From assembly GCA_943704425.1 (NCBI GenBank), contig CALSCP010000486.1, positions 1 to 64,000 of the forward strand: 64,000 bases of DNA, read 5' to 3'. The stretch is from Ministeria vibrans ATCC 50519. Its lineage: Eukaryota; Protista; Filasterea. A model generated the notes under the pieces. That model had not been told where the DNA came from and did no database searches. It was given only the letters and a program-made list of their open reading frames with translations. Below are positions 19,515 through 55,961 of the stretch, piece after piece (positions within the stretch are counted from its first letter, which is position 1; the number at the start of each line of letters is the position of its first letter). The translations under genes and the position numbers were made by a program.

Positions 19515-22236
19515 ATGGAAAATTTCAAGGCAGTCATCGACTTTTGCAACGAAGACGAAAAGTTCTTGACCTTCTCCAAAGGAGATGTTCTGCAGGTAAA
19601 CAACCCGTCTCTCGTCGCCTCTGTCTGCTCGCCGTCTCTCTGCCGCCATCCCCGCCCCTTCTGGTGTGCCTTTGTGGTCTAACCCCCCTCTTCCTAACCG
19701 CTCCATACGTCTACTGCTTGTTTGGCGCGTCCAACACTGTTGACGACGACAACAATTCAAAAAGTGTCTCCCTCGCCTCACATAGGTCTACAAGCGCGAC
19801 CATCCGGACTGGTGGATGGCCAAGGATCTGCTAACAGGACGCGTGGGCTGGGTACCGCGCAATGGCATTGTGGCAGAGCCCACAGAGACGCCAATGCCCA
19901 GCGGGACTGCTCGAACTTGCACTGCGCTCCACGACTTCCAAGGCTCTGCTGCGAACCAGGTACGCGCCTCACCCCGCCCCGCTGGGTCTACTCTCTGTGT
20001 ACTGATGGCTGTGTGTGCGTGTGCGTGTGCCGTCTGTGCAGCTGGGATTTGCGCGCGGCGAGACGTTTACCATTGTGCAGGAGCGCGGTGAGTGGTGGGA
20101 TGTCCGTCAGACCTCCAATGGCAAGCAGGGTATTATCCCCAAGTCGTACGTGAGCATCAACGAGCCGCCCAGCATCAAGGCTTCCGGGTCGTCGTCGACG
20201 ATGCTGCCAGCAGCTTCACGCGGATCAACAATGGACTCGGCAGAGAAAACGGAAGTGTTTGACTGGCTGCACACGTCGACGAAGCGCGATGAAGCCACGA
20301 AAATGCTGCGAGCGTTACCTCCCGGTGCGTTTCTCATGCGTAAAGTTGCTTCCAAGGCTGACTGCTACACACTGAGCGTGAAACCACTGCAAGGCACGGA
20401 CGTGACCCACTTCAAAGTGGAACGTCTCGCCAATGGCACCGGCGGCTACTCACTCGACGAACACACACAACTGCCCTCACTCAGTGAACTCGTTGCATAC
20501 TACTCACGCGAACCCATTAACATTGCCACAGGTCGTCTTCGTTTTGCATGTCCTCCACGCAAGCCAACAGCCACAGCGGCTGCTGCCGCTGTACCGTCAC
20601 AGCGTGGTGCGGCTCCCCCTCCTCCTCGCCCCACCACCGCCTCCGTCAACCCTCCTCTTCTCGACGCTACTTCTCTACCACCACCACCCTCCTCCTCCTC
20701 CTCCTCCTCCTCCTCCCTCCGTCGTTCTGCACCACCCCCTCCCACCACCCAACAACAACATCAGCAACAAGCAGCTCCGCCAGTTCCTCCCACCGCAGAC
20801 CTCTCCTCCCCCATCTCCATCGCATCCCGTCTCCAACACGCCGCCACCCAACTCAATCTCATTCCCCCCCCCACCACCACGGCTACCTCTACCACTGCCC
20901 CTCCCCCTCCCGTCCGCCACTCTCAACCCTCCTTTGCTCTCTCCGCTCCGTCCTACGACCCACGCGCTCCTATTGATATTCACGACTCCGTCGCACAGCT
21001 CATCCGCGACAAAACTGGCTGCACAATTCTCAAAGTAACTCCCGTTTCATTCCACTCTGTCACACATCTCTTTTTCACTCTTTTCAGGCTGCCTATGCCG
21101 CTGAGGCTCTTGCCCATCATCTCCTCCAGCAACTTCCGTTGCATACGGACGCTCTTCTCTCCGCCTTTGCTGCGCAAGTCCAATCAAACACTGTCGTCTC
21201 AGCTGCAGCAGTATGATCATCAGCATACAAATTATTTTCGTATCTGATTCACTTTTGATCCATGTTCATTGTAGACGGACGGTTCGCTCTCAGCAGACCA
21301 ACAGCGCTTGAAAGTAATTCTTGAAGAGCTGCACGACTGTCAAAACGACTCACAGCAGCGCAACTGGTCCACCTACGACGACAGCGCAATCATCGCAGAG
21401 TATCTTGAAGAGCTGGTACGCACTCACAAAGAGACACACCGAAAGAGATTGTGTTTCTGTCTGTATTACACTCACCCACTCTGTGTGCGTTTCAATCTCA
21501 CTTTCTTTCTCTATCGCTTTGTTTTTCTCCAATCACTTTGTTTCTCTCTTTTTCTTTCTTTCTTTTTGTGTATTTCATTTCACTCACTCATTCTTTCTGG
21601 ACTGCGAAGGTGACTCTACTCGAGCAGTCTGACCGTCTCGGGTGCGTGTCTGTGCTTGAGTCTCGTCAGTTTGCCTTTATCCACGCACTCATCTCGTACT
21701 ATCAGATGGAAGCCCGTTCGCCCTTACGTCTTCTTCTTCTCAAGGTCTCACTCACTTCTCTCATATACTCACACTCACTCACTCTGGTGCATTCACTACT
21801 TTCTTCTTCAGGTCTTTGGGGCTATTCTGAGTGTTGATGGCGCTACTTTTTTGCCTGTCCTGCTCAATTCTACTGTGGTTCCCAATGAGATTGCCCGTGA
21901 TATTACCAGCGTCACTGAGCAGTCCACAGACCAAATCACAGCAGAAGTACCCTCAAAAAGTTGCAATAAATTATTGTTGTTTCTCATTCAACCCTCTCTC
22001 CCCCTCTCTCCCTCTCTGGCTGTGCCTTACACTCAGACGCGCAAACGATTACTTTACAGTCTTGTGGTTGCGTCAATGCTCTTTGGGAATCCCGCACAAG
22101 ACGGACATGAATCGTGTCCACTCTCAGTCTTTCAGGTGTGGAACACCGAATTGGTTGAGAGACTGCTCAGAGTCATTTATGAAACACAAGCAGACGATGG
22201 TTAGTCACCCCGTCTCACAACCACTGAGACTCACTC

Positions 22237-25203: not shown

Positions 25204-28200
25204 ATGTCGTCGCCTCAGAAGAAGGCCGCCAAACAGGAAGAGGCTCTTCTTAGAGCAAAGCAGAAGAAGGTTTAAAAAAAAATATTACAATTCTCATTTG
25301 TTGTCTTCCGCCTTCGCACGCGGCAGGACGATGCGCCCTTTGACCGCGGGAGTCGTCTGTCTGCACCCCGTCTCGGTGTCGTGGGCTCTTTTTTTTGCTT
25401 CTTACGCTTCTTTGGTTCTTTTTTGCCCTTTTCGACATTAGACGTTCACCCGATGGGCAAACTCGTATCTCATCCACCGGTAAGCATCACCCCCCGTCTC
25501 CCATACGTCTAGCTCCATCGGCCGCCCCCGATGTTCCACTTACCACTCCCAATGCAAAAAACTCTCGTCTGTTTTTTTATATTTTTTTCTTCTCACCTTT
25601 TTTTTTCGCTTTTCTTCTTCTGTGCTGTTTGCACCGCAGGGATATGACAATCCACAACTTGTACGAGGACCTCAAGGATGGCATTTACCTGTTCAACTTG
25701 TGTCAGCTCATCTCGGGCAAGAAAGTCGGCTCGATCAACACCAACCCGAAACGGCCCATCCAACGGTCAGAGAACCTCTCCAAATCGTTTGACTTTCTTC
25801 TCAGTGAGGGTGTCAAACTCATCAACATCGATCCCAAGACAATCGAGTCGGGCACCGAGTATCTCATTCTCGGTCTCATGTGGGCTATCATCAACACGTA
25901 CCAAGTCAAGGGCGGCGGTACTGCGGGAGGCGAAGCCAAGGCACTCACCCTTGCCTGGTACGCTAATGTGTGTCGCTGTGTGTTGTGTCCCTTGTTTCCT
26001 TCAACTCTCTCATGTTTTTCTCTTGCGCACAACGTCAATAGGATGTCCGATGTCATTGGTGCGCCAGTGAAGTCGCTCAAGGATATGGTGGATGGCCAGA
26101 TACTCTCGCGCGTGGTCAATGGTGTAGCGCGCGCCGATCCTGAACTCCGACGCGATCTCATCGACATCGACACGCTCGATTTGAGCGAAGGTCAGAAGAA
26201 TAATAAGCATGCCATTGAATTGGCCGATTCACTTTTGGGTGTGCCAGCCATCATTGAGGAGGACTGCTTTAAAAAGAGCTCGCTCGATGAGCTCTCCATC
26301 ATGACCTACTTGGGCCTGCTGCGCGAGCTTGCCGACGAAAACAAAAGCAAGAGCGATGCCGCAGCGGCCACCGCCGATTCGTCACCGCCCACTTCTCGCT
26401 TTGCATTGCGCCGCGAATCGGCTGGTCGTCCCAGCAGTGGCGCCCCCTCTGCGCCACCGCAGCAACTCGTCATTGATGGTCCTACCAAAACGACACTCAC
26501 CGTCTACCAGGAGATCAGCATCCCACTGCGCGCTCAACTGCTTGATGGCCAAGCGTGGAACACGGGAGGTGCGTCGGTCACGGTCGAGTCGTCGTGCGCT
26601 CCTGAATTTCTTGCCTGGTCCGTCAGCGACAACAGCGACGGCTCCTACACCCTCACCGTCACTCCACGCACCCCCGGCGAGACAAGCGTTGTCGTGAAAA
26701 TCAACGGCGACGCTGCACGAAACGGTCCTCTGGTGCTCATAGTTTTGCCGCTTGCCAACGGTATTGCTTTTGTTCAACAAGACATTGCTCCCGCCACCTG
26801 CATGAGCACGTTCAAGTTCCAACTCACCTACGATGGCGCACCTGTCACCGATATGCCCGACAACGTGCTCTGCGATGTTGAGATCAGCACGGCCGGTGCG
26901 GTAGTTCTCGATGATTTGGGTCGCGGCAAGTTCTTCTGCGAATTTACCCCGGATTCTGCTGGGCTCATCAACTGCGCAATTTTCTTTGACGGCCGATCCG
27001 TCGGCACCTGTTCATTTGATGTGAAGCCTCGCACTGCGACGCTGTGCATTACCACCCTAGACGACGACGCGCCCTTGTCCACCACCGGTGACCCCTCAAC
27101 TGTCACGCTGGCCGTCCATGACGATTACACCGATGTGCTTATCGACGATATTAGGGCCGATGATGTTCTTGTGCGTGCCTCGCCCGAAGACAGCTGCAAA
27201 ATTGGCGGTGTTCATAGCTCTGCCCAGGGCTTCACAGTCGAAGTGGTGCCCCTGATTGCAGGCAAGTTCGGCCTTGTCGTACAGGCGACGACTCCCTACG
27301 GCCTGGTGGCGCGTGGTGAGCAGTTCTTTACTATCAGCAATCCGCTGTTGCGTGGCTCCCTCAGCGAGGTCTCTGGTACTGCTGGTCATCCGTGTAGTTT
27401 TGAGCTGCACGTCGAGCGAGATGGACATTCCTGCAAGAAGGTGAGTGCGGCGCAGTCAAACGTTGTGCTCGATGGCATCCACCTTGCGCCCATTGCGCAT
27501 GAGATCAAGGTTGCCGACTTGGATGGCCTCGAGGGCGGCCTCACCTGCACGTTTGCCCCACCAGTACCAGGCGACTACAAGCTGAGCGCCTCATGTTTTG
27601 GCGTGCCCGTTTCGCTTGATGCCAATGCAAAAATTCACATTGACGCGCTGCCCCCGCGTGTTTTTTCCGTCTCCATTGCGCCTCTTCCCGTTGTCGAGGG
27701 CTGTCGTTCGACAGTGAGCGTTGCCATGATCAACGAATACGATGGCGAACCCGTAAGCGAAGATGCACTTCCTCTCGACCGTGTCTGCCTGTCCATTGCC
27801 CCCACCGGCGACACCGTTCCTGCGACGCGTGTCTCGGCCGGCGGTGTCTACGAAGTCGACTGGACCCCTGCCGCAAGCGGACCGCACCACGCGACACTGC
27901 TTGTCTGCAATGAGCGTGCGCTGGACACACACGGCACAGTCAAGGGTGCCGTTGAGATCGCCGTGTCTGCGCCTGCGCCTCCCGTCGTGCACACGGTTGC
28001 GGTGGCCACACAGACACAGCTGGAAATGGACGAGATGCAAGAGCAAGACCGCCAGCGAAGCAGTCTCAAGGTGCGTGTGGACTTTCTAAGTAATGTCTGG
28101 GATTTGTCCGTCCCTTCGAGTTTTCGCCAAGTCCTCGATCGGGTCAAGTCCTTCCCGGGGGTAATCATTTTCAATATCTCTTGCCATCTTCGCAATTTTG

Positions 28201-31127
28201 ATGTCGCTGCCTATTCCCGTTGGCTCTTGCTCTCTCTTTTGTCAACCCCATAGCGCTTCGCCTCCATCGTATGTGCTGTGTTTGTTTTGTTTTTTCAAGT
28301 TCTTTGTTTATGTGCTTTATTGTGAATTAGTTGTGTTTTGTATTTTCCAAATGAAAATATTTCATCTTGACTGTAAAAATAATGACTATAATAATTCTCT
28401 TGAAGGAAAATGTTATAATAATAAGAATAATAATAATTATTATTATTATAATATTTTTATTATTATGGTTGTTATTATTGTTCTGATGTTTGTGAGGGTG
28501 TTCTTTTCTGTGACTGCAAAAGCAAAAACGAAAGCGTGCTCCATTTCTGATCAATGGTTTTTGGCTATTAGGCTGAAGTGGACCGGGCGAAACGGAGCCT
28601 TGAGGATGTGGGCGAGCAGCTGCATACGGAGAGCCAGACCGCACAGGAGCTGCAGAAGAAACTGGATGCGGCGGTGAAGCAGAATGAGCAGCTGGGAGCG
28701 GACTTGGAGGCGCAACGGAAGCAGGTTGAGGATTTGAAAAAGAAGCTGGATGGGGCGTTGGCGGATGCGCGTGCAGGGGAGGAACGCCATCGCAGTGTAG
28801 TGGCGGAGATGGAGGAGACAAACCAGCGACGTATTGTACGTGAGAAGGATAATCGAGCGGCGCGTGAGGCAGCCGAGGCAAGCGCGCAGAATGCTCAAGG
28901 GGAGGTGATGGCTGCTCGTGAGGCACTGGTGCGTGAGAAAACGGAAGCACAGCGGGAGTTGGAGGGACTGCGAGCCGAGCAGGAGCGATTGAGATCTGAG
29001 GCGGAGGCGGAACAGGGCCATCTTCAAGCTGAGCTGGAGCGATTAAGCACTGAGCTGGAGAGGGTGCGATCCGATATGGGTTCGGAGAATGAGCGGTTGC
29101 GTGAAGCTGGCGCCAAGGCGGAGGAGGATTTGGTTAGAGCGCATATGATGCGTGAGCGGGAGAGACTTGCAAGCGAGGATGATCTCAAGCAACTGCGTGA
29201 AGAGATGGAGAAGGCACGAAAGAAGGGCGAGGAGGAGAAGCAGCAGCTTAAGGATGCGCTGACAGCGGCCGGGGATGATCTCAAGCAACTGCGTGAAGAG
29301 ATGGAGGAGGCACGAAAGAAGGGCGAGGAGGAGAAGCAGCAGCTTAAGGATGCGCTATTGGCAGCGGCGGGGGATGATCTCAAGCAACTGCGTGAAGAGA
29401 TGGAGGAGGCACAAAAGAAGGGCGAGGAGGAGAAGCAGCAGCTTAAGGATGCGCTGACAGCGGCGGGGGATGATCTCAAGCAACTGCGTGAAGAGATGGA
29501 GGAGGCACGAAAGAAGGGCGAGGAGGAGAAGCAGCAGCTTAAGGATGCGCTGACAGCGGCGGGGGATGATCTCAAGCGACTGCGTGAAGAGGTGGAGGAG
29601 GCACGAAAGAAGGGCGAGGAGGAGAAGCAGCAGCTTAAGGATGCGCTGACAGCGGCGGGGGATGATCTCAAGCGACTGCGTGAAGAGATGGAGGAGGCAC
29701 GAAAGAAGGGCGAGGAGGAGAAGCAGCAGCTTAAGGATGCGCTGACAGCGGCGGGGGATGATCTCAAGCAACTGCGTGAAGAGATTGAGGAGAAGCACAA
29801 ACTTCAGGATGCGCTGACAGTGGCGGGGGATGATCTCAAGCAACTGCGTGAAAAGATGGAGGAGGCACAAAAGAAGGGCGAGGAGGAGAAGCACAAACTT
29901 CAGGATGCGCTATTGGCAGCGGAGAAGGAGCGTGATCGACTGGGCAAGGCACTGGAACAGGGTGCCGGTGAGCAAGGTCAGGAAGTGAAGCGACTCTGTG
30001 AGGAACTGTCACAGGCCCAGCAGCGCGAGAAGAAGCTCGCACAAGCGAGTGCTGCGGCGGAGAAACTGGCTGGGGAGGAACTGTCAGCGGCAAAGAAGAG
30101 TGCAGCGGAAGCGCAGAACGATTTGCAGGGACGATTGACAGCGGCCGAGAAGGCACGCGACAAGTTGGAGCGGGTGGGACATGATGCCACCAGGGCATTG
30201 GAGAAGCGTCTGGTCAGTGCCGAGAAGGAGCGAGATGCGGCCAAGAAGGGACTGGAAAAGGCAGAGAAGGCGCGCGATGACGCGGTGCGGGCACGCGACA
30301 ATGCACTGCGAGCGCATGATCATGTGCAGGCGGTTGCAAATGGGCTTCATGATCGCGTGAAGGCGGCGGAGACTGAATGCGACAAGGCTCGGGCGTCGGT
30401 TGAGGCTAAGCAGAGGCAGCTGACGGATGCGGAGCAGGAGGGAGCACGACTTGTGAAGGAACTGAAGGCACAGCCGGAAGAGCCGTCGACGAAGGAGAGC
30501 AGGGTGCTTGGCAAGGTGCTGTCGAATGCGGTGGTTTTAGCGACTGTAGCGGCAGTAGCGTGGCACACGAGTGACATTGACACGGTGTCGAGTACGTCGC
30601 ATGGGCTGTGGTGTGCGGGTTTGGGTGCATTGGCGTCGGCAAGTGCACTGGACGCGGTTGGAGTGGATCCTACACAGAGCATGCCTGCCCAGGTGAGTCG
30701 GGCGGTACTGGATGGCACATGGGTGACGGCGCTGCCTCTTGCAGTTGTGACGGTGCTTGTGCCGGCATTGGGTGCGATGCTGAGCAGCAGCGAGATTGTT
30801 CCTTTGCTTGTGTTGGCCACCATGGCATTGGCGACGGTGCTTGCCGTTGGGGTGTCGGAGGGCACCCGACGGGCTGTGCAAGGGGCGTTTGTGGCCAGTC
30901 AGGTGGGTTTGATGGCCGCAGCGGGTGCAGAGAAGGCGTACGTGGCCATGCTGCTGAGCGGGGCGAGTGTGATCGGGGCGAGCGTGGTGGCAGCGCGCCA
31001 GCCCGTCCTGTGGACAGGGCAGTCTGCACCCTGGGCAGCCAACCTCGCCAAGGCCACTATTGTTGCCGCCCTGGCCGAGGCCTACCGTCCCCATGTTCAG
31101 GCCAACTCGCTCATGCCCTACAACTAA
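25204..31127 (+). CDS. Actinin-type CH-CH + filamin/Ig-like repeats + long coiled coil + C-terminal hydrophobic multi-helix region
   Basis: TFTRWANSYL..LYEDLKDG..ILGLMWAII (CH1) and DELSIMTYL (CH2). Filamin repeats (DNSDGSYTLTVTPRTPGETSVVVKING). Phase-0 intron 28071-28571 (gtgcgt..ttag) joins in frame to the 849-aa coiled-coil/hydrophobic ORF. Confidence 0.78.
29178..29920 (+). repeat. Coding tandem repeat, ~8 x 96 bp (DDLKQLREEMEEARKKGEEEKQQLKDALTAAG)
   Basis: Near-identical units starting at 29178, 29274, 29373, 29469, 29565, 29661, 29757 (short) and 29829. Confidence 0.95.
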
Positions 31128-44504: not shown

Positions 44505-44976
44505 TTTCCTAAAATTGCTCAATTAACAATCAATCAGTACAAATATCCGTCCAATCTCTGTCTTGGCTTGACGACCTAAGTAGGAGGGAGAGTAATCTGC
44601 GCTTTGCGGGAAAGAGCCCTCGGCCCATGGCGCCACACCACTCACGGTTGCACGGTTTGACCATAAGGCGAAACGGTTGACGGGCGTCAACCAACCAGAG
44701 TGGCGTGAGCATTTTACCGAGCAAGCAACTAATGTCGTGCTGCGCTTTAGGGGCATTGTTCCGGGCATTCATTGTCGCGGACAAAGAGAAACGCGTCTCC
44801 GACGAACTGGTGGTAGTCGACTACCTAGTACCTAGTTGTCGGCACAGAACTTGCCTGTCTTGCTGCCAAGGATGATGAGCACATAATTGTCGAAGTAAGA
44901 TGAGACAGTGACTGACCAAGTACCTACTAAAATGGGAATGTTTCATTACTGGAAACTTATATTTATTCCTTTTAAC

Positions 44977-45176
44977 ATGCCCCCTACCCCACCCTCTGCA
45001 AGGGCAAGGGGCAAGCACTGGCTCGCCGTCATCTTGACACTGGCTCTGATCGCACGTACGCCCAATACCCTTTCCGCCCTCGCGCCCACCCCACACGCCC
45101 CCGACCAACGTCCACCTCCCTCCAGCGACCGCATCAGTGTTTGACTCACGTGTGTTATAGCCAGCGTCGCTCACAA

Positions 45177-45212
<36 letters not shown>

Positions 45213-48200
45213 AACACTCGCTCAGTCTCATAACCATGATTTTTTTTTTTTTTTTTTTAAAAACGTCCTCTTTCTTCTCACTGAGCCCTCCACCCGTCCT
45301 ATGCCCAACGCCAGGCACTCGCCGTCGGCACTGCAAGCGCCCCGTCGCATAGCCGACACAGCCCTGGCCCAGATGCGCCGTTCCGCTGCACATCTGCGCA
45401 CTTATCGTCTCCCAACACAACCTCGCTTGTCAAGTTGGACAAAAAAAAAACCCATCGTCATGCACATTGTCAAACCTGGCTGCGTGCGCCCCAACACACA
45501 GCGTTGGTCGTGTTCGTTCAGCTGACACGAGCAACTGCGTAGACGGAGCCAAGGCGAAGACGGCGCGAGCGGTGTTCGTTCACAACGGCATCTCCGGCTC
45601 CATCGTCTTCAGCCAGGACTCTGCCTTCTTCTCCACCCACGTCCAAGTGGACCTGGCTGGCCTCCAGCAAACCCCCAATGGCTGGCACATCCACAAATTC
45701 CCCGTGGACGACGCCGGCTCGTGCCAGAGTTCCTCGACTGGCGCCCACTTCGATCCGACTGCCGCTGGGCCCTCCGGAACGTCCGCCTACAACTCCGTCT
45801 GCTTCCCTTCTGCCGGCGCATCGCGTTTCACTGCATGCGAAGTAAGATCCAATCTATCATCGCACAAACATCATTAACTTTTTTTCGTTTCCTTTGTGTG
45901 TGCGTGTGTGTCTGTCTCATCAGGTTGGTGACATGTCAGGCAAATGGGGCGCATTCAACAGCTCGAGCGTGACAGAGTCCTTCGACGACGGCACCGTCGA
46001 ACTGTTTGGGCGCACCTCCATTGTGGGACGTTCAGTTGTGTTGCACGCCTCGGACGGTACTCGGTATGGGTGTGCCACCATCACGACAGACACACCCGTG
46101 ACACAGGCACGCGCGTCGTTTGCCCACAACGGTCTCACCGGTACGGCCACGTTCACACAGGCATCGGGTATCGACGACGACACGGGAATTCTAGTCGACA
46201 TCGACAGCACAAGTGCTGGCAGCAACCACAACTGGGCCATCCATGAGTTTGGCACGACCGACTCGGGCTTTGGGTCGCCCTCGTGTTCCCTGGTGGGCGA
46301 CGTGTACAATCCAGCAAACGTGTCGACCGCCTCACAGATTGCCTACGTGGGCAACTGTGGACCCTCCATTCCAAATCCCACCGGCTGTCGCGTCGGCGAT
46401 CTCTTCAGTCGCTTCGGGCGTCTGTCTCTCCCTGCCACGGGCGCCTCCAAGTACTTCTTCACCAACACAGACTTGCCGCTGGGCAATGCTTCAGACTCTG
46501 TCGTCTCGCGCGCCCTCCAAATATCCACCGCTCAGGCGTCGCCCGAGTTCACTGCACCCGCTCTTGCCTGTGCCGACGTGGCGCTCGTTGCTCCGCGTGC
46601 CGTCACCGCCGTCTTCTCTAGCGAGCACGCCACAGGCACGATCACCTTCTCGCAACAATCACCCGGTGCTCCTACCTTTGTCACCGCCTCCCTTTGGGGT
46701 CTTGCCGACGCACCCGTCAATTGGCACGTCCATGTGTTCCCTACCGATGCCACCGCGTCGTGTGCCAGCTCGAGTGTCGGCGGTCACTTCAACCCGTTTG
46801 GCGTTGACTCGGCAAACGCCTCGGCGTATTCGGCCGTCTGCTCGTCGACCGCGTCCGGTCGTTTTGCTCATTGCGAAGTTGGCGATCTCTCGGGCAAGCA
46901 CGGCCCGCTCGCCAACGGAGTCACACTCTCCGTCGTCGACTACAATCTACCTCTCTTTGGCGCCAACAGCGTTGTAGGACGCTCCATTGTGCTGCACGCC
47001 GCGTCCGACGGTGCTCGCTTTGCCTGTGCCACCATTGACGTGGGCCTTCCCGTCAAGACGGTTGTCGCACAGTTTCAGCCGGGCGGCCCCGTCTCAGGCA
47101 CCGTCACATTCAAGCAGATTGCAAACGACCCTTCCGCCGAGACCCAAGTGCTCGTCGACTTGGAAGCCACGGGTGCCGCGTCCGTCGCCCACAAGTGGCA
47201 TGTGCACGTGAATCCCATTGGTGACGATGCAAACTCGCCGTCGTCTCCGTGCGACTCGGCCGGCGGCCACTACGATCCATTCATGGTGGGACCCACGTTT
47301 AATGCAAACTATGCCACGGACTGTTCGCCGTCGACTCCGANNNNNNNNNNNNNNNNNNNNNNNNNNNNNNNNNNNNNNNNNNNNNNNNNNNNNNNNNNNN
47401 NNNNNNNNNNNNNNNNNNNNNNNNNNNNNNNNNNNNNNNAAACTCGCCGTCGTCTCCGTGCGACTCGGCCGGCGGCCACTACGATCCATTCATGGTGGGA
47501 CCCACGTTTAATGCAAACTATGCCACGGACTGTTCGCCGTCGACTCCGACCGCCTGCGAACTGGGCGACTCGTCAGGCAAACACGGAACTATCGACTTGC
47601 CCGGCAAATACTTCTACACCGACACACAATTGCCGCTGTCGGGCGTCAACTCGGTCGACGGTCGCTCCGTTGTGTTGCACGTCGCCAACAACGGAGCACC
47701 GCGCTTTGCCTGCGCCTCCCTTGCCGCCGCCGTACCCCGCACCCTTGTCGCGGTCTTCTCAGAGAATGGCGCTGCCGGCTCCATCACCTTTTCACAGCTT
47801 CACGCCAATGCCCCGACTGTTGTGACAAGCACCGTCAGTGGCCTTGCCAGCGCTGATGGTCCCACCTATCCCTGGCACGTGCACAACTTTCCCGTGCTCA
47901 CCGGTTCATGTGCGGCCGACGCCGTGGGCGGTCACTTTGATCCGCTGCAGGTGAACCACACCGACTACGCGACCGTGTGCACCCCTACGTCGCCGCGTCG
48001 CTTTGGCGCGTGCGAACTTGGCGATCTTTCCGGCAAACTGGGCGGACTTGCAAGTGGCACATCGGCTACCTGGATCGACTACAACCTGCCGCTGTTTGGC
48101 ACCCACTCCATCATGGGCCGCTCGGTGGTGCTTCATAGCGGCGCCACCAACGCGCGCATTGCATGCGCCTCCGTTGGTTACCCACAGGGTGCCGGCATGC

Positions 48201-49067
48201 TTACCACGGTTCGTGCAGTCTTTGAGGCACCATCGGCCGTCACGGGCTCTATCACAATGCGTCAGCTCTCGGACGACACCTCCTCCGAGACTACCATTCT
48301 CATCGACCTGAGCTTCACTTCGACCGGCACCACGCCCACCTCGGGTCACAAGTGGCATGTTCACGTCGAACCCACCGGCAACGACGGTGCTGCTTCGGTC
48401 GTCGACGCCTCTCGATGTCTCTCCACCGGCGCCCACTACAATCCATCGGGTGCCAACACAGCGGCCGCCAACTACTCGAGCGCTTGCCAGGCGTCCGTCG
48501 ACAATTGTGAACTCGGCGATTTGTCGACGCGACACGGGACGGTTATTTTGCCAGCGGCCCTTGCCACCAAGGCCATGTACACCGACACCCGCTTGCCCTT
48601 GGGTGGCCCCGAATCCGTTGCCAACCGCTCCATTGTCATTCATGTTGCTAACGAGGGCGGCCCTCGACTTGCCTGTGCAACTCTCAACGTTGTCGCTCGT
48701 CGCACTACCACCGCCATCTTTGCCATGTCGGGTGTCACGGGAGCGCTCACCTTTGAACAGGGCATGCTCAATGATCCCACCTTTGTCACAGCCGACCTCT
48801 TTGGTCTTGCGGGCCTGCCCAACAAATGGCACGTTCACTCTTTGCCCCTTGTCGCCTCAGACGGGCCTGACCAGTGCGCCGCCTCCCTTGTCGGCGGCCA
48901 CTTTGACCCTTTTGCCGTCGGATCCGCCACGGACTACGCCACCAACTGCCAACCATCGTCGTCGTCGCGCTTTGAAGCATGCGAGGTAATAATAGTACAT
49001 GACTGCTATCTATAGTAATAATAATAATTATTATAATTATAACCATAATAATAATGGTTGTGATTTT

Positions 49068-49112
<45 letters not shown>

Positions 49113-49232
49113 GTAATAATAATAGTAATAATAATAGTAATAATAATAATAATAATAATAACAATAATAAAACAATAAAATAATTTATATTAATAATCAT
49201 AATTTATTTTATTTATTTATTAATTATTAATA

Positions 49233-49272
<40 letters not shown>

Positions 49273-52200
49273 TTTTTATTTTAATGATTGTGAAATAGAA
49301 TTTAGACAGGAGGTTTCAAATTTTTTATTCTTGTTTCTTTTTTTTTAGGTTGGTGACTTGTCGGGAAAACACGGAGCATTCACGGCGAGCAACACATCAG
49401 GAAGCAGCTGGATTGACTACAATCTGCCGCTGTTTGGCGCCAACAGTATTGTGGGGCGCTCGATTGTGCTGCATGACAGTACAGGGGCACGCGTGGCATG
49501 TGCGACCCTCCGCCCAGATGGACGTCTCAAGACGGTGCGCGCTGTGTTTGTCGACACGTTTGCTACGGGCACAGTGACGCTGCGTCAGCTTGCAGACGAC
49601 CCCACTGCCGAGACCCAGGTGCTTGTAGATCTTGCGCCCCTCACGGGTGTCGCTGCCTCATTTGCTCACAAGTGGCATGTGCACGTGTTTCCCGTGGGCA
49701 ACGATGCCAACTCGCCGTCGTCTCCGTGCGACTCGGCCGGCGGCCACTACGATCCATTCATGGTGGGACCCACGTTTAATGCAAACTATGCCACGGACTG
49801 TTCGCCGTCGACTCCGACCGCCTGCGAACTGGGCGACTCGTCAGGCAAACACGGAACTATCGACTTGCCCGGCAAATACTTCTACACCGACACACAATTG
49901 CCGCTGTCGGGCGTCAACTCGGTCGACGGTCGCTCCGTTGTGTTGCACGTCGCCAACAACGGAGCACCGCGCTTTGCCTGCGCCTCCCTTGCCGCCGCCG
50001 TACCCCGCACGGTCACGGTCACGTTCACGTCGAACGACATCAACGGTGACATGGTGTTCTCTCAGGTGGACGCGGCGTCACCCACGTACATCACGAGTGA
50101 CCTGTCGGGCGCGGGACTTGTGGACTCACCTAATCCCTGGCATGTTCACTCGTTTCCTGCGGTGCAGTCACCTCTCTCGCCCGACTGCTCCGCCTCGTCG
50201 GTGGGCGGCCACTACGATCCCTTCCAGGTCGATCACACGGAGTATGCCAGTGTGTGCACTTCCGTTGGGGACTCACCGCGTCGCTTTGGTGCGTGCGAAC
50301 TAGGCGATCTTTCTGGCAAGCACGGAGCACTCACGCCAGGTGTGGCCGCCGCCTGGACCGACTACAACCTGCCGTTGTTCGGACGCTTTTCCATTCTGGG
50401 CCGATCCATTGTGGTTCACTCGGGCGCGTCTGCTAGCCCGCGCATTGGCTGTGCCAACATTGGCTACGAGCGGTCGGTGATCACCTCGCGTGTCTCGTTT
50501 GCAGGCTCTACCTCGGCACTCTCGGGAACCATCACGTTCCGTCAGGTTGCCGACGATCCCAGCGAAGAGACGACCGTTTTTGTGGACCTTGATCGCGCTG
50601 ACGGCGTAGCCTCGTCGACGGGCCACAAGTGGCATGTGCACACCAACGCCGTGTCGGGCAACGACGGTGACCCGGCGACCACTCTTCTGGTCGACCGGTG
50701 CGCCTCCGCCGGCGGTCACTTCAACCCGCTTGTATCCACGTCCGTTGGCTGCTCACCGGGAACTCCGCTTCTCTGCGAGGTTGGCGATCTCAGTGGCAAG
50801 TCGGCACAGCTCACGTTACCCGCCACTGGCTCAGCGAAATTCTTTTACACGGACGTCCAGCTGCCGCTCAGTGGTGCCAACTCGATTTTGGGACGTTCCG
50901 TCGTGATTCACGATCAAGACGCCTCGGGTTTGCGCCTTGCCTGTGGCAACGTGATTCGTCTCACGACGCGAACACTGACCAGCACCTTTTGGGCTGGTGG
51001 AGTGTCGGGCACGATTGAGTTTGCACAGACACTCGCGTCGGACCCGACTCTCATCACTACCAATATTTTGGGTCTGCCGAGTGCCTCGGGACACAACTGG
51101 CACATTCACAACTTTCCCACGGCCGACACGAACACGTACCCGAGCGAGACGGGCGAGGGCTGCGACGCAGCCGTCACTGGCGGCCACTACGATCCCACGG
51201 GTGTTTCGGGCTCGGCGAACTACGCCACCGAGTGCAGCGTGTCGGCTGCGACGCGATTTCAGTCGTGCGAAGTGGGCGATCTCAGTGGCAAACATGGAGT
51301 GCTCACTAACGGCGTCGCCACCTATTCCGATCCAACCATCACTCTGTTTGGACGCACCGCTATTATGGGTCGCTCGGTGGTGGTGCACTCAAGCACGGCA
51401 CGCATCGCATGCGCCTCCATTGGCTTTCCCAACGGCGCCGCGGTACTCACGGCAGTCGCTCATTTGTATGGGGACACCCGCGGACGCATTGTGATGCGCC
51501 AGCTGGCCGATGATCCCACAAGCGAGACGTCTGTTCTCGTAGACATGGCCTGGCACAATGGTTCGACCACGGCCACTGTCGGTCACAAGTGGCACGTGCA
51601 CGAAGACCCCATTGCGGGAGATTCACTTGCCACCACAGACCGCTGTGGGAGTGCCGGCGGTCACTACGATCCTCTGGATGCCAGCTCGAGTCCCGCCTAT
51701 GCGACGGTGTGCACTCCCGAGACACCCACCGCCTGCGAGATTGGCGATCTCTCAGGCAAGTCGGCACCACTCTCGTTTGGAGCGCCCCTCTCGACACGCA
51801 CGCTCTACACCGACGTGAATCTGCCGCTCTCAGGCGACACCAGCGTCATGGGCCGCTCCGTGGTGATCCACGCGGCAGCGCTCAGTGGCACACGCCTCGA
51901 CTGCGCTACGCTTGAGCAATGGAAGGTGCGCACGAGCACCGCCACGTTTGATGTGGACGCCACAGTCGAGGGTACGGTCACTCTGTCGCAGGGTGTGCCA
52001 TGGGAACCAACATCGGTGCGCGCCGCTTTTTCGGTGCTGACAGGCTCGCCCAATCCCTGGCATGTTCATGTTGGCCCCGTGCGCGAGACGGACGTGTGCA
52101 CAGCAACCGCCATTGGGGGTCACTACGATCCGTATACGGTGTCGACGGTGTCGTATGCGGCGCGCTGTCAGCCCTCATCGGCGACGCGTTTTGACGCGTG

Positions 52201-54508
52201 TGAACTGGGCGATCTGAGCGGCAAGCACGGCAATTTGAACCTACCCGCAGCGCAGGGGGCGACCTGGCTCGACTGGAACCTGCCACTGTACGGCCGACAC
52301 TCGGTGGTGGGCCGCAGCATTGTGGTACACGACAGTGCGAGCAATCGCATTGCGTGTGCGTCGCTCTCGTACCCAGGCTCGATGGCCATGTCGTCGGCTA
52401 AGCTCATTGGACCTGCCATTGAGGGGGACATTGAGTTTCGTCAGTTGGCCGGGCGTCCATACGAGGACACATATATTTACGCATCACTCACTTTGGTGCA
52501 GGGCGCGACCACAACGACGGGCCACAACTGGCACATGCACACAAACAAGGCGGCCACAGACTCGGTCGATAGTAGCGCGTCGTCGCGCTGTCAGAGCGCC
52601 GGGGGTCATTACAGTCCGCTGCCGACGGGCACGTGCTCCATGAGTATGCCACACCAGTGCGAGGTGGGCGATCTTGCGGGCAAGCAGGGCCAGCTGTCGC
52701 TCTCGCCGTCGGGCTCGCTTGTGGTGCTCACCGACGTCGTGTCACCGCTGAGTGGTCTTTACTCACTGAACGACCGCTCGGTGGTCATCCACGACGCCAA
52801 CAGTGGCGCAGGGCGACTTGGTTGCTCGACGTTGTTCCAGGTGACCGATGGACTCGACTCGAGTGACTCAGACTCGTCTACGATTATTGTGTACGCTGCT
52901 GCGGGCGGCGGCGGCGCAATCCTCCTCATTCTTCTGCTCATCCTGTGTGTGGTCGGTCGCAGATGGATTTACCGTGTGTGCTGCTGCAACTCGTGTCGTT
53001 GCTGTCCGTGCGGTCGCCGTCGCCGCAGCAACTCCGCGTGGACTCCCAAGCAGCGAGGGATGTCATCGGAGCCACTCACGTTTGCTATGACGGACATGCC
53101 CAAGGCCAATGCACTCTACGAGAGCGGCAGCGTCTACGGCGGCGCCAAAATGGACGACGGCTACAGCACCAATGTGGATCCCATCTACGAAAACACAGGC
53201 GACATTTACTACGGCAAGGGCGCCGCCTCGGCTCCCGGTGACCACTACAGTACGCTCTTTTCCAACCAAGAGTCCGCGTTGCCGCGTCACGAGGTCCTAT
53301 ACGACTACGTACCGCAGAATGCGGACGAGTTGGAGTTGCGACTGGGCGATGCGGTGTGCGTGACGCAGCGGCAGGAGGACGGTTGGTTTGTCGGGCTCAA
53401 CACGCGCACCAAGGCACGCGGTGTGTTCCCCGGCAACTACGTTAATGTCGACGCACTGCCCGACGCCAATGCCAATGCAGCTGGTGCTGGTGCTTCTGAG
53501 ACCGGTAATGGTGTTGGTACAACGACTCTGAGTGAGACGGATCCCGTTATGGCGAGTCTGCTTGAGGAACGCGATCGTCTGCCGATCAAGCGTGAGCCGT
53601 CGCGTCCTCTCAAGCCACCTGCCATTGTGGCTGCCGAGCCTGTTCGTCCGCCCAAGCCCGCTGCGCGGCCCAACGGACACATGGGACCGTCCGCTGCGGC
53701 GCCCGTTGCTGCTACTGCTGCCAATGCTGCGACGCCCGCTGAACCGGGTGCTGCCGAGCCTGCTCCCACCTATGTGGCACGACCCGCGCCCCGTCCTGGA
53801 GCTGTTATGCAGAAGAAGGGCTCCAACAACATTCCATACAAGCCGCCTCCTCGGCCGGCTCCCAAGCCCTCACCCACAGCGTCGCCGTCCACGCCTGTAG
53901 TGCCTCAGCGGCCGTCACAGCCACAAGCCCCCCCGCGCAGCAGCTTTACTGAGCAGCCTAAGGCGACGGGGCGACCTCGTTCGCGTGTCATTGCTGCGCC
54001 CGACGCCGGCCTGTACGAGAGCGCTCGCACGCGGACCGGTGTGCCTCAGATTTCATGGGGTGCGGCTGCTGCCTCTTCTACTCATGCCAGCACCACCACC
54101 GCTGCTGCTGCTGCATCACCGTCCCGTCCAGCTCCGCCTCGTGCACCTTCCACTATGCCACCTCAGCCAGGGAAGCCTGCGCCTCGTCCTGCGAGTGTGC
54201 TCCCCCCGGGCGCTCGGCTCATGAGCGGACCTCCGCCTCCCGGTGCGGTTGTCATTCGCGGACCACCACCACCTGGTGCAGTGCTGGTGCGTGGACCTGC
54301 GCCAGGCGGCACGGCGATTCCCGTGCGCGGCCCTCCACCAGCAGGGCCTGGAGCCATTTCTATGATGCGTCCTCCTATGCACTCTCAGATGGCTGTGCGT
54401 CCGCCGCCCAGTGTTGTGCGGCCTCCGCCCCCAAGCGGAGTGCGTCCTCCAGGTCAAATTATCTACCCTCCTCCGAACCGCCTTCCCCCCGCGCCGCCGC
54501 CGGAGTGA
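44977..54508 (+). CDS. Type-I membrane protein: at least 14 Cu-only SOD domains + TM + Cys cluster + Tyr motifs + SH3 + Pro-rich tail
   Basis: Signal-peptide exon 44977-45055 splices in frame to 45522. Repeated WHVH..GGH(F/Y)(D/N)P..CE(V/L)GDLSGKHG..GRS(I/V)V(L/I)H..R.AC units. TM at ~52884-52955; SH3 (VLYDY..ADELEL..DGWF..GVFPGNYV) at ~53290-53445. N-gap at 47341-47439. Confidence 0.9.
49015..49285. repeat. (AAT)n/(TTA)n microsatellite in an intron of the SOD-repeat gene
   Basis: AT-rich triplet runs between the donor at ~48986 and the acceptor at ~49348. Confidence 0.95.
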
Positions 54509-54908: not shown

Positions 54909-55961
54909 ATGAACGACCGAGATGCAGTGGTAATACCACCATTCCGGTTTTGTCTGGTTGAGCGGGGAGTGTTCCGTGGCGGCTATCCCATGAAAAAGGT
55001 TTGGCCCTCACTGTGTGTGCTCAACACAGTTCGCTCAACCTCTCCCTCTGCGAATGTAGAACTTTACGTTCATGCGGCGCCTGTCATTGAAGTACCTTGT
55101 CTCGTTGACACCATTGCCGCCCAACGACGACCTCACAGCCTTCTGCAACGACAATGGCATCAAAAACATACACATTCCCGTCGAGCACCACAAAGAAGAC
55201 ATCCTCCTGTCGCACGCCAAGGTACGCCACCGTCTCCCCGGCATCCCCCGCACTGACACACGGGGCTCTTTCGTCCCTGGGCAGGTTGCGCGCGTCCTCC
55301 CCATGCTGATCAACGCCGACCTGCATCCGCTCTTCCTGCACTGTCTCAACGGTGCGCGCGTCACCGGTCTTGTGGTCATGGTGCGACTCCCGCCTGCCCC
55401 CCTACCTCTCACCCTTGTCTCTTCTAGTGTCTCCGGAAACTCCAGGTGTGGCAAAATGCCGCGATTCATACGGAATTTTCTCGTTTCATCAAGTACGGAG
55501 CAAGACACTGTGTTGTTGGTGTTGTCTCACGAGCTTCTTTGTGTATTAGGAACTTTGTTCTTTCCACGGAAGAGTCGCGCTTTGTGTCTGCCTTTCGTCA
55601 CGACATTGACGTGCCGTACAATCAGCCCGAGTGGCTCTGGAAAGGTAAGTGCGCGAAGAACGGCACACTGTGATTGTTTCTTTCATTTGATACAAATTGC
55701 ACGTTAGGCTTGGGAAGGGGCGCAGTGCAGAGTACGCTGAAGATGAAGCTGCGGTTTGTGGAGCACGACGAGGAAGGGCGGGAGGACGACGAGACGGCGA
55801 GCCGGAAGCAGCGCGAGCGACAGCAGAGTGCCGTCGACCAGCGCCAGAGCGAAATCACAGCGCTGCTTGAAGGCTCGTCGGTGGGCCATGCACCACCCTC
55901 GCTGCATGTGATCAACGAATCGCCCTTGCTCAATGCGCTGGCCCTTGAAATTGGCCGATGA
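54909..55961 (+). CDS. SIW14/OCA-family (PFA-DSP) phosphatase-like protein, OCA6-like
   Basis: IPPFRF..VERGVFRGGYP..NF.FM..L.LKYLVSLTP, PLFLHCLNG..VTGLVVM|CLRKLQVW..I..EFSRF. Confidence 0.85.

What the first reader, a model, noticed from the sequence alone, without database searches (positions are those of the whole stretch)
44977..54508. Receptor-like protein with at least 14 Cu-only SOD domains and an intracellular SH3/phosphotyrosine signalling tail
Seen: signal peptide, then 14 countable SOD-fold repeats, 13 of which keep all four Cu-ligand His (WHxH, GxH, VxH) plus CE(V/L/I)GD in place of the Zn-binding His. These are followed by one TM helix, the cluster CCCNSCRCCPC, several Tyr motifs (ALYES, DGYST, PIYEN, DIYYG, DHYST), an SH3 and a long Pro-rich tail. 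Known: this signature matches Cu-only SODs (fungal SOD5, single domain) and animal Cu-only SOD repeat proteins (about four domains, extracellular/GPI-type); I know of none described with a cytoplasmic signalling tail. Inference: a surface enzyme-receptor that senses or converts extracellular superoxide, or binds copper, and signals through SH2/SH3 networks, perhaps using local H2O2 to inhibit tyrosine phosphatases. Best candidate for a new system in this window.
Basis: partly seen in the sequence, partly recalled or inferred. Interest (0 to 1): 0.93.

Follow-up and report, generated by a model that had tools for sequence, protein, structure and literature searches.

The report
Membrane-anchored 14-domain copper-only SOD protein
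A marine single-celled relative of animals encodes a cell-surface protein with 14 copper-only superoxide dismutase domains outside the cell and an SH3/proline-rich tail inside; it belongs to the known CSRP/SOD4 family, but the papers I could read do not describe this tail.

Summary
A four-exon gene on the + strand (44977-54508) encodes about 2803 residues. It has a predicted signal peptide, 14 tandem Sod_Cu domains, one TM helix, a juxtamembrane Cys cluster, Tyr motifs, one SH3 domain and a 348-residue tail that is 25% proline. Thirteen domains keep four Cu-ligand His, the SOD5-type E/D signature, the catalytic Arg and four Cys; D02 is degenerate.

The assembly gap looks spurious. The 110 nt on its two sides are identical, merging them restores the frame, and independent contigs run straight into the shared 302-nt tract. 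Spliced contigs confirm introns 2 and 3. Intron 1 and the signal-peptide exon remain predictions.

The array is not a new kind. It is a CSRP/SOD4-family member. Its best homologue, Capsaspora CAOG_08503, is already listed as a CSRP and has the same SOD-TM-SH3 build. Two paralogues in this genome share that build, and so does a Choanoeca flexa protein.

What the papers I read do not mention is the SH3/Pro-rich tail. This array is also longer than the published maximum of 12 repeats.

Most likely function: a surface superoxide dismutase tethered to cortical adaptor or actin machinery. True receptor signalling is untested, and the Tyr motifs are not conserved. The scan's other notes on this stretch (s1-772148, s1-772022, s1-771928) agree.

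The parts
44977..45055 (+). Exon 1: ATG and predicted signal peptide (basic n-region, then a hydrophobic run).
   Evidence: Read from the sequence. GT donor at 45056, phase 1. Not confirmed by RNA contigs.
45056..45521 (+). Intron 1 (predicted, 466 nt, GT..AG). It holds a (CA)n run and a poly-T run.
   Evidence: The splice sites and the phase fit. An X6 contig runs unspliced back to 45345. A second in-phase acceptor lies at 45433-45434.
45522..45841 (+). Exon 2: first part of SOD domain D01, ending ...CE.
45842..45923 (+). Intron 2 (82 nt, GT..AG, phase 0, placed between CE and VGD).
   Evidence: Skipped in contigs of X6 and of the poly(A) RNA run X17.
45924..48985 (+). Exon 3: rest of D01, D02-D06 and the first part of D07. 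It contains the assembly gap.
47341..47439 (.). Assembly gap (99 N). It is most likely spurious, because the two flanking contigs overlap.
   Evidence: 47231-47340 equals 47440-47549 at 100% and the merge restores the frame. Independent contigs lead straight into the shared tract.
47440..47549 (+). Duplicate copy of the 110 nt left of the gap. It is dropped in the merged model.
47441..47742 (+). 302-nt tract R, copy in D04, 100% identical to the copy in D08.
   Evidence: It forms a separate contig with higher k-mer depth than its flanks in three runs.
49709..50010 (+). 302-nt tract R, copy in D08.
48986..49348 (+). Intron 3 (363 nt, GT..AG, phase 0, again placed between CE and VGD).
   Evidence: Skipped in contigs of X6 and X10.
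49349..54508 (+). Exon 4: rest of D07, D08-D14, the TM helix, the whole cytoplasmic tail and the stop codon.
   Evidence: One open frame.
45055..46082 (+). D01 (type A, Cu site intact). It spans introns 1 and 2.
46083..46580 (+). D02 (type B). Degenerate pseudo-SOD: three of the four Cu-ligand His, the E of the signature and the Arg are lost.
46581..47036 (+). D03 (type A, intact).
47037..47722 (+). D04 (type B, intact). It spans the gap and the duplicated 110 nt.
47723..48175 (+). D05 (type A, intact).
48176..48685 (+). D06 (type B, intact).
48686..49510 (+). D07 (type A, intact). It spans intron 3.
49511..49990 (+). D08 (type B, intact).
49991..50461 (+). D09 (type A, intact). This domain was aligned to SOD5.
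50462..50953 (+). D10 (type B, intact).
50954..51421 (+). D11 (type A, intact).
51422..51913 (+). D12 (type B, intact).
51914..52366 (+). D13 (type A, intact). First half of the modelled pair.
52367..52834 (+). D14 (type B, intact, next to the membrane). Second half of the modelled pair.
52880..52957 (+). Single transmembrane helix, followed by basic residues.
   Evidence: Hydrophobic stretch read from the sequence. Homologues have a helix at the same place.
52979..53011 (+). Juxtamembrane Cys cluster (8 Cys in 11 residues). Candidate palmitoylation site (inference).
   Evidence: It is absent from the paralogues and from Capsaspora. Smaller juxtamembrane Cys clusters recur in other TM-anchored SOD arrays.
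53111..53254 (+). Tyr-motif region (ALYES, DGYST, DPIYEN, DIYYG, DHYST). It includes one YxN and one DPxY.
   Evidence: Only an I-Y-(D/E) core recurs in paralogue C99.
53285..53455 (+). SH3 domain with a family-specific N-x-R-T-K ... PGNY signature.
   Evidence: Pfam SH3_9 at 4e-12 and SH3_1 at 5e-11. It aligns with the SH3 of C99, C1788 and Capsaspora.
53462..54505 (+). Pro-rich tail (348 aa, 24.7% Pro, 23 PxxP, 2 class I and 5 class II SH3-ligand motifs, three PPPP runs).

Best explanation
This is a type I membrane member of the CSRP/SOD4 family, carried by a marine unicellular holozoan.

Shown: a chain of 14 Cu-only SOD domains is built from seven A/B pairs. Thirteen domains keep every residue needed for copper binding and superoxide dismutation. 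A single TM helix follows, then a 518-residue cytoplasmic tail with an SH3 domain and many PxxP and polyproline motifs. The gene is transcribed and spliced. The same build is kept in paralogues and in Capsaspora.

Inferred: the protein sits at the cell surface. It takes up copper outside the cell, as fungal SOD5 and animal CSRPs are thought to do. It converts extracellular superoxide, from the environment or from the cell's own NOX-type oxidases, into H2O2 right at the plasma membrane. The tail does not relay a ligand signal. It positions and clusters the enzyme by binding SH3 or PxxP adaptors and actin regulators, and possibly by palmitoylation of the Cys cluster. Tyr phosphorylation may modulate this, but it is not a conserved feature.
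For: - Domains: Sod_Cu repeats and SH3 by Pfam.
- Catalytic residues: 13 of 14 domains keep four His, E/D, Arg and four Cys, at only 36-47% pairwise identity.
- Cu-only character: the E110/D113 motif aligns with SOD5. The Zn-ligand His are absent and the loop between the last His and the Arg is short.
- Fold: the AF2 model of D13-D14 has pLDDT 88.5 and pTM 0.84. Its best single-domain match is SOD5, with TM-score 0.78 and rmsd 2.5 A, above the Cu/Zn SODs.
- Expression: spliced contigs, including a poly(A) RNA run. X6, which lacks introns 2 and 3, holds 90% of the words of the whole 9.6-kb stretch, and the tail is 17% of that stretch.
- Strain variation: four of five differences are synonymous.
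- Conservation of the build: two paralogues in this genome share SOD array, TM and SH3. So do Capsaspora CAOG_08503, Choanoeca flexa P0121 and the metagenomic P0133.
- Possible superoxide sources: several NOX/ferric-reductase-type loci are in the genome.
- Published family data: recombinant oyster CSRP dismutates superoxide, and the family acts outside the cell (PMC13017621). SOD4 is described as TM-anchored and proposed to process NOX-derived superoxide (PMC10416458).
Against: - No activity, metal content, topology or localisation was measured.
- The signal-peptide exon is not confirmed by RNA.
- Paralogues C99, C1788 and C540 keep the array while losing many or most Cu sites; C99 and C1788 also keep the SH3 tail. 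The shared function of the family therefore may not need catalysis.
- The NOX link is only co-occurrence in one genome.
- SH3 partners are unknown.
Confidence: 0.6

Rival explanations
1. It is a true signalling receptor. Copper loading, redox state or superoxide flux at the ectodomain changes clustering or conformation. This triggers Tyr phosphorylation of the tail and recruits SH2/SH3 partners, with local H2O2 inhibiting Cys-based phosphatases.
For: - The tail carries Tyr motifs, including a YxN and a DPxY, plus an SH3 and PxxP motifs.
- The genome has at least 28 SH2 hits, and an SH3-SH2 adaptor lies in the same window.
- The architecture is conserved in Capsaspora and in a choanoflagellate.
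- A Y_phosphatase2-family gene lies 560 nt downstream.
Against: - There is no kinase or other catalytic domain in the tail.
- The Tyr motifs and the Cys cluster are not conserved in the paralogues or in Capsaspora; only the SH3 and Pro-rich stretches are.
- No known mechanism couples a 14-domain chain to one TM helix.
- The phosphatase neighbour is not repeated beside the paralogues.
Confidence: 0.15
2. It is mainly a structural, adhesive or copper-handling surface protein. The SOD fold serves as an Ig-like bead in a long stalk that links the outside (matrix, prey, other cells, or bound copper) to cortical actin through the SH3/Pro-rich tail. Dismutase activity is secondary or absent.
For: - C99, C1788 and C540 keep the array while losing about 7 of 16, about 10 of 13 and nearly all Cu sites; C99 and C1788 keep the SH3 tail as well.
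- Cu-less CSRPs exist in arthropods and tardigrades (PMC13017621).
- The tail has polyproline runs of the kind bound by actin regulators.
- The genome has integrins and many cadherin repeats, so adhesion receptors are part of its biology.
Against: In this gene 13 of 14 sites keep all His, E/D and the catalytic Arg. The Arg has no role in mere copper binding or in the fold, so selection is acting on catalysis.
Confidence: 0.2
3. It is an assembly artefact: the array is inflated or chimeric because near-identical repeats were mis-joined around the gap.
For: A gap lies inside the gene. A 302-nt tract is 100% identical between D04 and D08, and 110 nt are duplicated across the gap.
Against: - Three independent runs give the same junctions: left flank into R, R into the following block, and that block into R again.
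- In the DNA run X2 the block between the two R copies is not deeper than the left flank (146 against 170), and R is about 2.4 times deeper. The tool warns that contig depth is no copy number.
- R occurs nowhere else in the assembly.
- Paralogue C99 has at least 16 domains in one uninterrupted ORF with no gap.
Confidence: 0.04

Closest known systems
Capsaspora owczarzaki CAOG_08503 (XP_011270085.1), listed as the Capsaspora CSRP with 12 repeats
   Same: It is the best full-length homologue, at 39% identity. It has tandem Cu-only SOD domains in A/B pairs, one TM helix, a basic juxtamembrane stretch, an SH3 with the same N-x-R-T-K...PGNY signature, and Pro-rich flanks.
   Different: The record is partial. 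It has 11-12 domains against 14, and a shorter tail (about 230 aa after the TM against 518). It has no Cys cluster and different Tyr positions. The review that lists it describes CSRPs as secreted or GPI-anchored and does not mention its TM helix or SH3.
Animal CSRP / SOD4 / CUSR (oyster, fish and frog proteins)
   Same: Signal peptide, tandem Cu-only SOD-like domains with very short linkers, E110/D113 signature, conserved disulfide, no Zn site, short loop VII, and a Cu-less repeat near the N-terminus. Their predicted structures were not compared here. The SOD4 paper describes a C-terminal TM domain. Many are in the hit list at 33-38% identity.
   Different: Animal proteins have 3-6 repeats. 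They end in a GPI signal or in a TM helix with a short tail, and none of those seen here carries an SH3.
Candida albicans SOD5 (PDB 4n3t, 5cu9), the fungal Cu-only SOD
   Same: Each domain matches the SOD5 fold best, with TM-score 0.78. The domains share the four His, the EVGD motif, the Arg and the disulfide.
   Different: SOD5 is a single GPI-anchored domain. Here there are 14 domains, an extra Cys pair in each domain, and a TM helix with a cytoplasmic tail.
Choanoeca flexa EP00730_P005522 (P0121) and metagenomic P0133
   Same: SOD domains, then a TM helix, then SH3.
   Different: Each has only three SOD domains. In P0121 only the first has all the motifs scanned; in P0133 none of the three was matched on all four. 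P0121 has three SH3 domains. The SH3 of P0133 lacks the N-x-R-T-K signature, so a common origin of the fusion is not shown.
Monosiga brevicollis MONBRDRAFT_37745 (P0025), listed as a choanoflagellate CSRP
   Same: A multi-SOD ectodomain followed by a hydrophobic helix.
   Different: 5-6 domains. Only 48 residues follow the helix, and there is no SH3.

Membership tests
CSRP (Cu-only SOD repeat protein) / SOD4 | Several tandem SOD-like domains joined by very short linkers | tested here: met
   14 back-to-back domains of 151-170 aa. Pfam Sod_Cu hits lie along all the exons.
CSRP (Cu-only SOD repeat protein) / SOD4 | [quoted passage not shown] | tested here: met
   AF2 model of D13-D14 with pLDDT 88.5. 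Foldseek matches SOD5 and Cu/Zn SODs with probability 1.00.
CSRP (Cu-only SOD repeat protein) / SOD4 | No Zn site and a shortened loop VII (electrostatic loop) | tested here: met
   The positions of the non-bridging Zn-ligand His are replaced, with E in CE.GD. Only 6-9 residues lie between the last His and the Arg.
CSRP (Cu-only SOD repeat protein) / SOD4 | E110/D113 signature of Cu-only SODs | tested here: met
   CE(V/L/I)GD occurs in 13 of 14 domains and aligns with HEVGD of SOD5.
CSRP (Cu-only SOD repeat protein) / SOD4 | Intact four-His Cu site in most repeats, with an N-terminal repeat that lacks it | tested here: met
   13 of 14 are intact and D02 is degenerate.
CSRP (Cu-only SOD repeat protein) / SOD4 | Conserved intramolecular disulfide Cys pair | tested here: met
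   The Cys before the bridging His and the Cys after the Arg are present in all 14 domains, together with a second Cys pair. Bonding itself was not measured.
CSRP (Cu-only SOD repeat protein) / SOD4 | N-terminal secretion signal | tested here: inconclusive
   Exon 1 encodes a plausible signal peptide and has fitting splice sites. No RNA contig shows the exon 1 to exon 2 junction.
CSRP (Cu-only SOD repeat protein) / SOD4 | Anchoring: GPI or secreted (CSRP papers), or a C-terminal TM domain (SOD4 paper) | tested here: met
   It meets the SOD4 definition (TM helix; PMC10416458). It differs from the GPI/secreted description because 518 cytoplasmic residues follow the helix.
CSRP (Cu-only SOD repeat protein) / SOD4 | Copper binding and superoxide dismutase activity | not testable with these tools
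   Needs recombinant protein, metal analysis and an activity assay.
SH3 domain | Match to the SH3 profiles above the curated cut-off | tested here: met
   SH3_9 46.2 bits (cut-off 30) and SH3_1 42.5 bits (cut-off 22.9).
Receptor with intrinsic enzymatic signalling (receptor kinase or phosphatase type) | A catalytic signalling domain in the cytoplasmic part | tested here: not met
   Pfam finds only the SH3 in the tail.

The most novel reading that the evidence does not exclude
The ancestral CSRP of animals and their unicellular relatives was a redox-coupled surface receptor, not a free or GPI-linked antioxidant. The SH3/Pro-rich tail docks the SOD array onto NOX-organiser-like or adaptor complexes, so that superoxide made at the membrane becomes a local H2O2 signal feeding Tyr-phosphorylation and actin networks. 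Animals later lost the tail.
Probability: 0.12. Interest if true: 0.85.

Novelty: new variant of a known kind. Interest (0 to 1): 0.55.

Why it matters
CSRPs are a recently recognised family whose function is still called enigmatic (PMC13017621). In frogs the family is needed for tail regeneration, and oysters are the only case with shown activity.

The unicellular versions are type I membrane proteins with a conserved SH3/Pro-rich cytoplasmic tail. That gives the field a concrete handle: a set of binding partners to pull down, and a testable link between extracellular superoxide chemistry and the cell cortex.

This genome also offers a natural series, from a nearly fully 'active' array (13 of 14 sites) to mostly Cu-less paralogues with the same tail. 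Such a series can separate catalytic roles from scaffold roles.

The array lengths here (14, and at least 16 in a paralogue) exceed the published maximum of 12.

Tried and rejected
- SH3 against its own tail. Complex prediction of the SH3 (53264-53476) with the motif-rich stretch 53549-53701 gave no answer (score 0.02, mark 0.34). This is not evidence either way.
- Organism identity. A protein search with the filamin-like ORF returned nothing. The Atlas search with the BK-channel ORF gave no useful taxa. Marker searches place the organism only broadly: no LHC genes, at least 28 SH2 hits, three integrin beta loci, a Runt domain and many cadherin repeats. That fits a non-photosynthetic unicellular holozoan, perhaps a filasterean. 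It is not Capsaspora owczarzaki, whose protein is at most 39% identical.
- An alga as host. I considered this because some holder runs are labelled algae metagenomes and rejected it.
- Unplaced contigs filling the gap. C540 and C1412 share no sequence with the SOD exons; the only match is 52 nt at 92% inside intron 3.
- The phosphatase neighbour as a functional partner. Y_phosphatase2 genes do not flank the paralogues.
- Papers. The 2018 JBC paper that named CSRP is not held, so I cannot say whether it mentions the Capsaspora tail. The Capsaspora locus could not be fetched.
- The joined (spliced and gap-merged) protein model was built only inside scripts, for coordinates and the domain table.

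Full report
**What is there**

The + strand between 44977 and 54508 holds three long open frames full of Sod_Cu matches, and the last frame ends in an SH3 domain.

The gene model has four exons: 44977-45055, 45522-45841, 45924-48985 and 49349-54508. All three introns are GT..AG. Introns 2 and 3 sit at the same place in the domain, between CE and VGD, in phase 0.

Contigs from public runs laid on 44950-49700 skip intron 2 in X6 and in X17, a poly(A) RNA library. They skip intron 3 in X6 and X10. X6 holds 90% of the sampled words of the whole 9.6-kb stretch, which matches the exonic share and includes the tail. The gene is therefore transcribed and spliced.

Intron 1 is not confirmed. An X6 contig runs unspliced back to 45345, and no contig shows the junction with exon 1. 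No in-frame ATG exists in that unspliced stretch, so an upstream signal-peptide exon is still the only coherent reading. A second in-phase acceptor lies at 45433-45434.

**The gap (tested first)**

- The 110 nt left of the gap (47231-47340) are 100% identical to the 110 nt right of it (47440-47549).
- The offset is 209 nt, which is exactly the shift between the reading frame on the left and the one on the right.
- Merging the overlap gives an uninterrupted CDS of 8412 nt, or 2803 residues.
- The overlap is the start of a 302-nt tract (R) that is identical in D04 (47441-47742) and D08 (49709-50010).
- In three independent runs the left-flank contig ends 30 nt into R. R is a contig of its own. 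The next contig starts 30 nt before the end of R, and the block between the two copies leads back into R.
- No other sequence enters the gap. R occurs nowhere else in the assembly.
C540 matches the gene only over 52 nt at 92% inside intron 3, and C1412 does not match at all.
- The only alternative is extra copies of the 2268-nt, four-domain block between the R copies. In the DNA run X2 that block is not deeper than the left flank (146 against 170), and R is about 2.4 times deeper. The tool warns that contig depth is not a copy number.
- Fourteen domains is therefore the best estimate, and long reads are needed for certainty.
- In run X10, which appears to be a different strain, R is still a single contig carrying two differences. 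That suggests ongoing gene conversion between D04 and D08 (inference).

**The domains**

Alignment of the 14 domains shows WHxH, G(G/A)H, CE(V/L/I)GD, V/I-x-H and R-x-x-C in 13 of them. D02 has lost three of the four Cu-ligand His, the E and the Arg.

phmmer against PDB sequences aligns CELGD of D09 with HEVGD of C. albicans SOD5, the E110/D113 signature of Cu-only SODs. The non-bridging Zn-ligand His are absent. The loop between the last His and the Arg has only 6-9 residues.

Each domain has four Cys: the canonical pair plus a second pair around the shortened Zn loop.

An AlphaFold2 model of D13-D14, built on an 11-row alignment of domain pairs, has pLDDT 88.5 and pTM 0.84. Its best single-domain match in the PDB is SOD5, with TM-score 0.78 and rmsd 2.5 A, ahead of the Cu/Zn SODs.

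Odd and even domains form two types. Mean identity is 47% and 43% within the types and 36% between them. In a tree the two types form two clades, each holding domains from this gene, from paralogue C99 and from Capsaspora. An A/B pair is therefore the ancestral unit, and the arrays are older than these lineages.

**The tail**

- After D14 comes a hydrophobic helix (52880-52957), then basic residues.
- A cluster of 8 Cys in 11 residues follows, then five Tyr motifs.
- Next is an SH3 (53285-53455), then 348 residues with 24.7% Pro. This stretch has 2 class I and 5 class II SH3-ligand motifs and three PPPP runs.
- The cytoplasmic part has 518 residues, and Pfam finds no catalytic domain in it.

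**Relatives**

The best full-length homologue is Capsaspora owczarzaki CAOG_08503 (partial, 2024 aa, 39% identity). It has 11-12 SOD domains, a TM helix, an SH3 and Pro-rich flanks.

This genome is 29.7 Mb in 2860 pieces and holds three more genes for membrane-anchored SOD arrays:
- C99:21606-29828 is one ORF of 2741 aa with at least 16 domains, about nine of them intact, then TM, SH3 and a Pro-rich tail.
- C1788:71942-77788 has about 13 domains, three or four of them intact, then TM and SH3.
- C540 is mostly degenerate, with a TM helix and a 45-residue tail without SH3.

The SH3 domains of the window gene, C99, C1788 and Capsaspora align along their length and share an N-x-R-T-K...PGNY signature. 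C99, C1788 and Capsaspora also have a PxxP-type motif just upstream of the SH3. The Cys cluster and the Tyr motifs are not shared.

An exhaustive profile search of 1.84 billion representatives returned mostly animal CSRPs of about 1000 aa. Of 145 SOD-bearing hits, 22 have a helix after the last SOD with at least 25 further residues. Among those with long tails:
- Choanoeca flexa P0121 has three SOD domains, a TM helix and three SH3 domains.
- The metagenomic P0133 has three SOD domains, a TM helix and one SH3.

Monosiga brevicollis MONBRDRAFT_37745 has a helix plus 48 residues and no SH3. No other protein in the listed hits combines Sod_Cu with SH3.

**The organism**

Names are blinded. The sequence turns up in marine, seawater and algae-labelled metagenomes.

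The genome has no LHC genes. It has at least 28 SH2 hits, three integrin beta loci, a Runt domain and many cadherin repeats. It is not Capsaspora owczarzaki.

I read it as a marine unicellular holozoan, possibly a filasterean. This is an inference.

**What is known**

- The 2026 review by Peterson and Culotta describes CSRPs as having 4-12 tandem Cu-only SOD repeats.
- It calls the 12-repeat Capsaspora protein the largest known, and it describes the family as secreted or GPI-anchored.
- Its Table S1 names CAOG_08503, MONBRDRAFT_37745 and PTSG_08625 as the pre-metazoan members.
- Lyubetsky et al. 2023 call the family SOD4. They give a signal peptide, multiple SOD domains and a C-terminal TM domain as its common features, and they propose that it converts NOX-derived superoxide to H2O2.
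- Tan et al. 2025 showed SOD activity for an oyster CSRP and state that CSRPs occur only in animals.
- I found no mention of an SH3 or a cytoplasmic signalling tail in these three papers, and none in full-text searches.
- The 2018 paper that named the family is not held.

**How it most likely works**

Shown: the architecture, the conservation of every catalytic residue in 13 of 14 domains, a Cu-only SOD fold, expression, and conservation of the SOD-TM-SH3 build in paralogues and in Capsaspora.

Inferred: the array is extracellular and copper-loaded, and it dismutates superoxide at the membrane. The tail anchors or clusters it through SH3 and PxxP contacts with adaptors and actin regulators. 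The Cys cluster is palmitoylated. The genome has several NOX/ferric-reductase-type loci that could supply superoxide, but no link to them is shown.

I put this at 0.6. A mainly structural, adhesive or copper-handling role gets 0.2. It is supported by the Cu-poor paralogues and opposed by retention of the catalytic Arg in this gene. An assembly artefact gets about 0.04.

**Verdict**

This is a new variant of a known kind. It is a CSRP/SOD4 protein with the longest near-fully intact array I am aware of. It carries a conserved SH3/Pro-rich cytoplasmic tail that none of the CSRP/SOD4 papers I could read mentions, although the Capsaspora orthologue with the same build sits in public databases.

The joined protein model was used only inside scripts. 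All searches were made exon by exon, by reference.

Noticed in passing
window 55054-55704 (+): A Y_phosphatase2-family gene (Siw14/Oca-like Cys phosphatase, Pfam E 8e-14) starts about 560 nt after the stop of the SOD gene. Other copies of the family are not next to the SOD paralogues, so the adjacency is probably chance.
   Followed up: partly
G000:C99:21606-29828, G000:C1788:71942-77788, G000:C540 (- strand; L015:1080-4247): Three paralogous genes for membrane-anchored SOD arrays, with a graded loss of Cu sites (about 9 of 16, 3-4 of 13, and about 1). Two of them keep the same SH3 tail. Together they form a natural series from 'enzyme' to 'scaffold'.
   Followed up: partly
G000:C1412 (L016:2-604, - strand): A 201-residue SOD exon that is nearly identical at protein level to the first SOD exon of the C1788 paralogue. 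It is either a haplotig or a very recent duplicate.
   Followed up: no
P0148 (Lacrimia lanifica, EukProt EP01063_P008742): Two SOD domains fused to a Dicty_CAR-type seven-helix receptor in a diplonemid. This is another case of an SOD-like ectodomain joined to a signalling module.
   Followed up: no
P0018 (Bigelowiella natans, EukProt EP00466_P012156); P0130 (Salpingoeca infusionum, 4247 aa): A six-SOD-domain protein with a TM helix and a 53-residue tail in a rhizarian alga. This conflicts with published statements that multi-domain Cu-only SOD proteins occur only in animals or in opisthokonts. There is also a 4247-residue choanoflagellate protein with six SOD domains and a TM helix.
   Followed up: no
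window 47441-47742 and 49709-50010: In run X10, apparently another strain, the 302-nt tract is one contig carrying two differences from the window. The two copies therefore seem to change together, which points to gene conversion between D04 and D08.
   Followed up: partly
window 5707-8307 (+), 13499-17665 (-), 20015-21244 (+), 25395-28250 (+): Neighbouring ORFs with RasGAP plus SH3, a BK/Slo-type potassium channel, an SH3-SH2 adaptor, and a CH-domain/filamin-repeat protein (Pfam).
   Followed up: no
window 45178-45262: A (CA)n microsatellite and a 19-20-nt poly-T run inside predicted intron 1. Public contigs break here.
   Followed up: no
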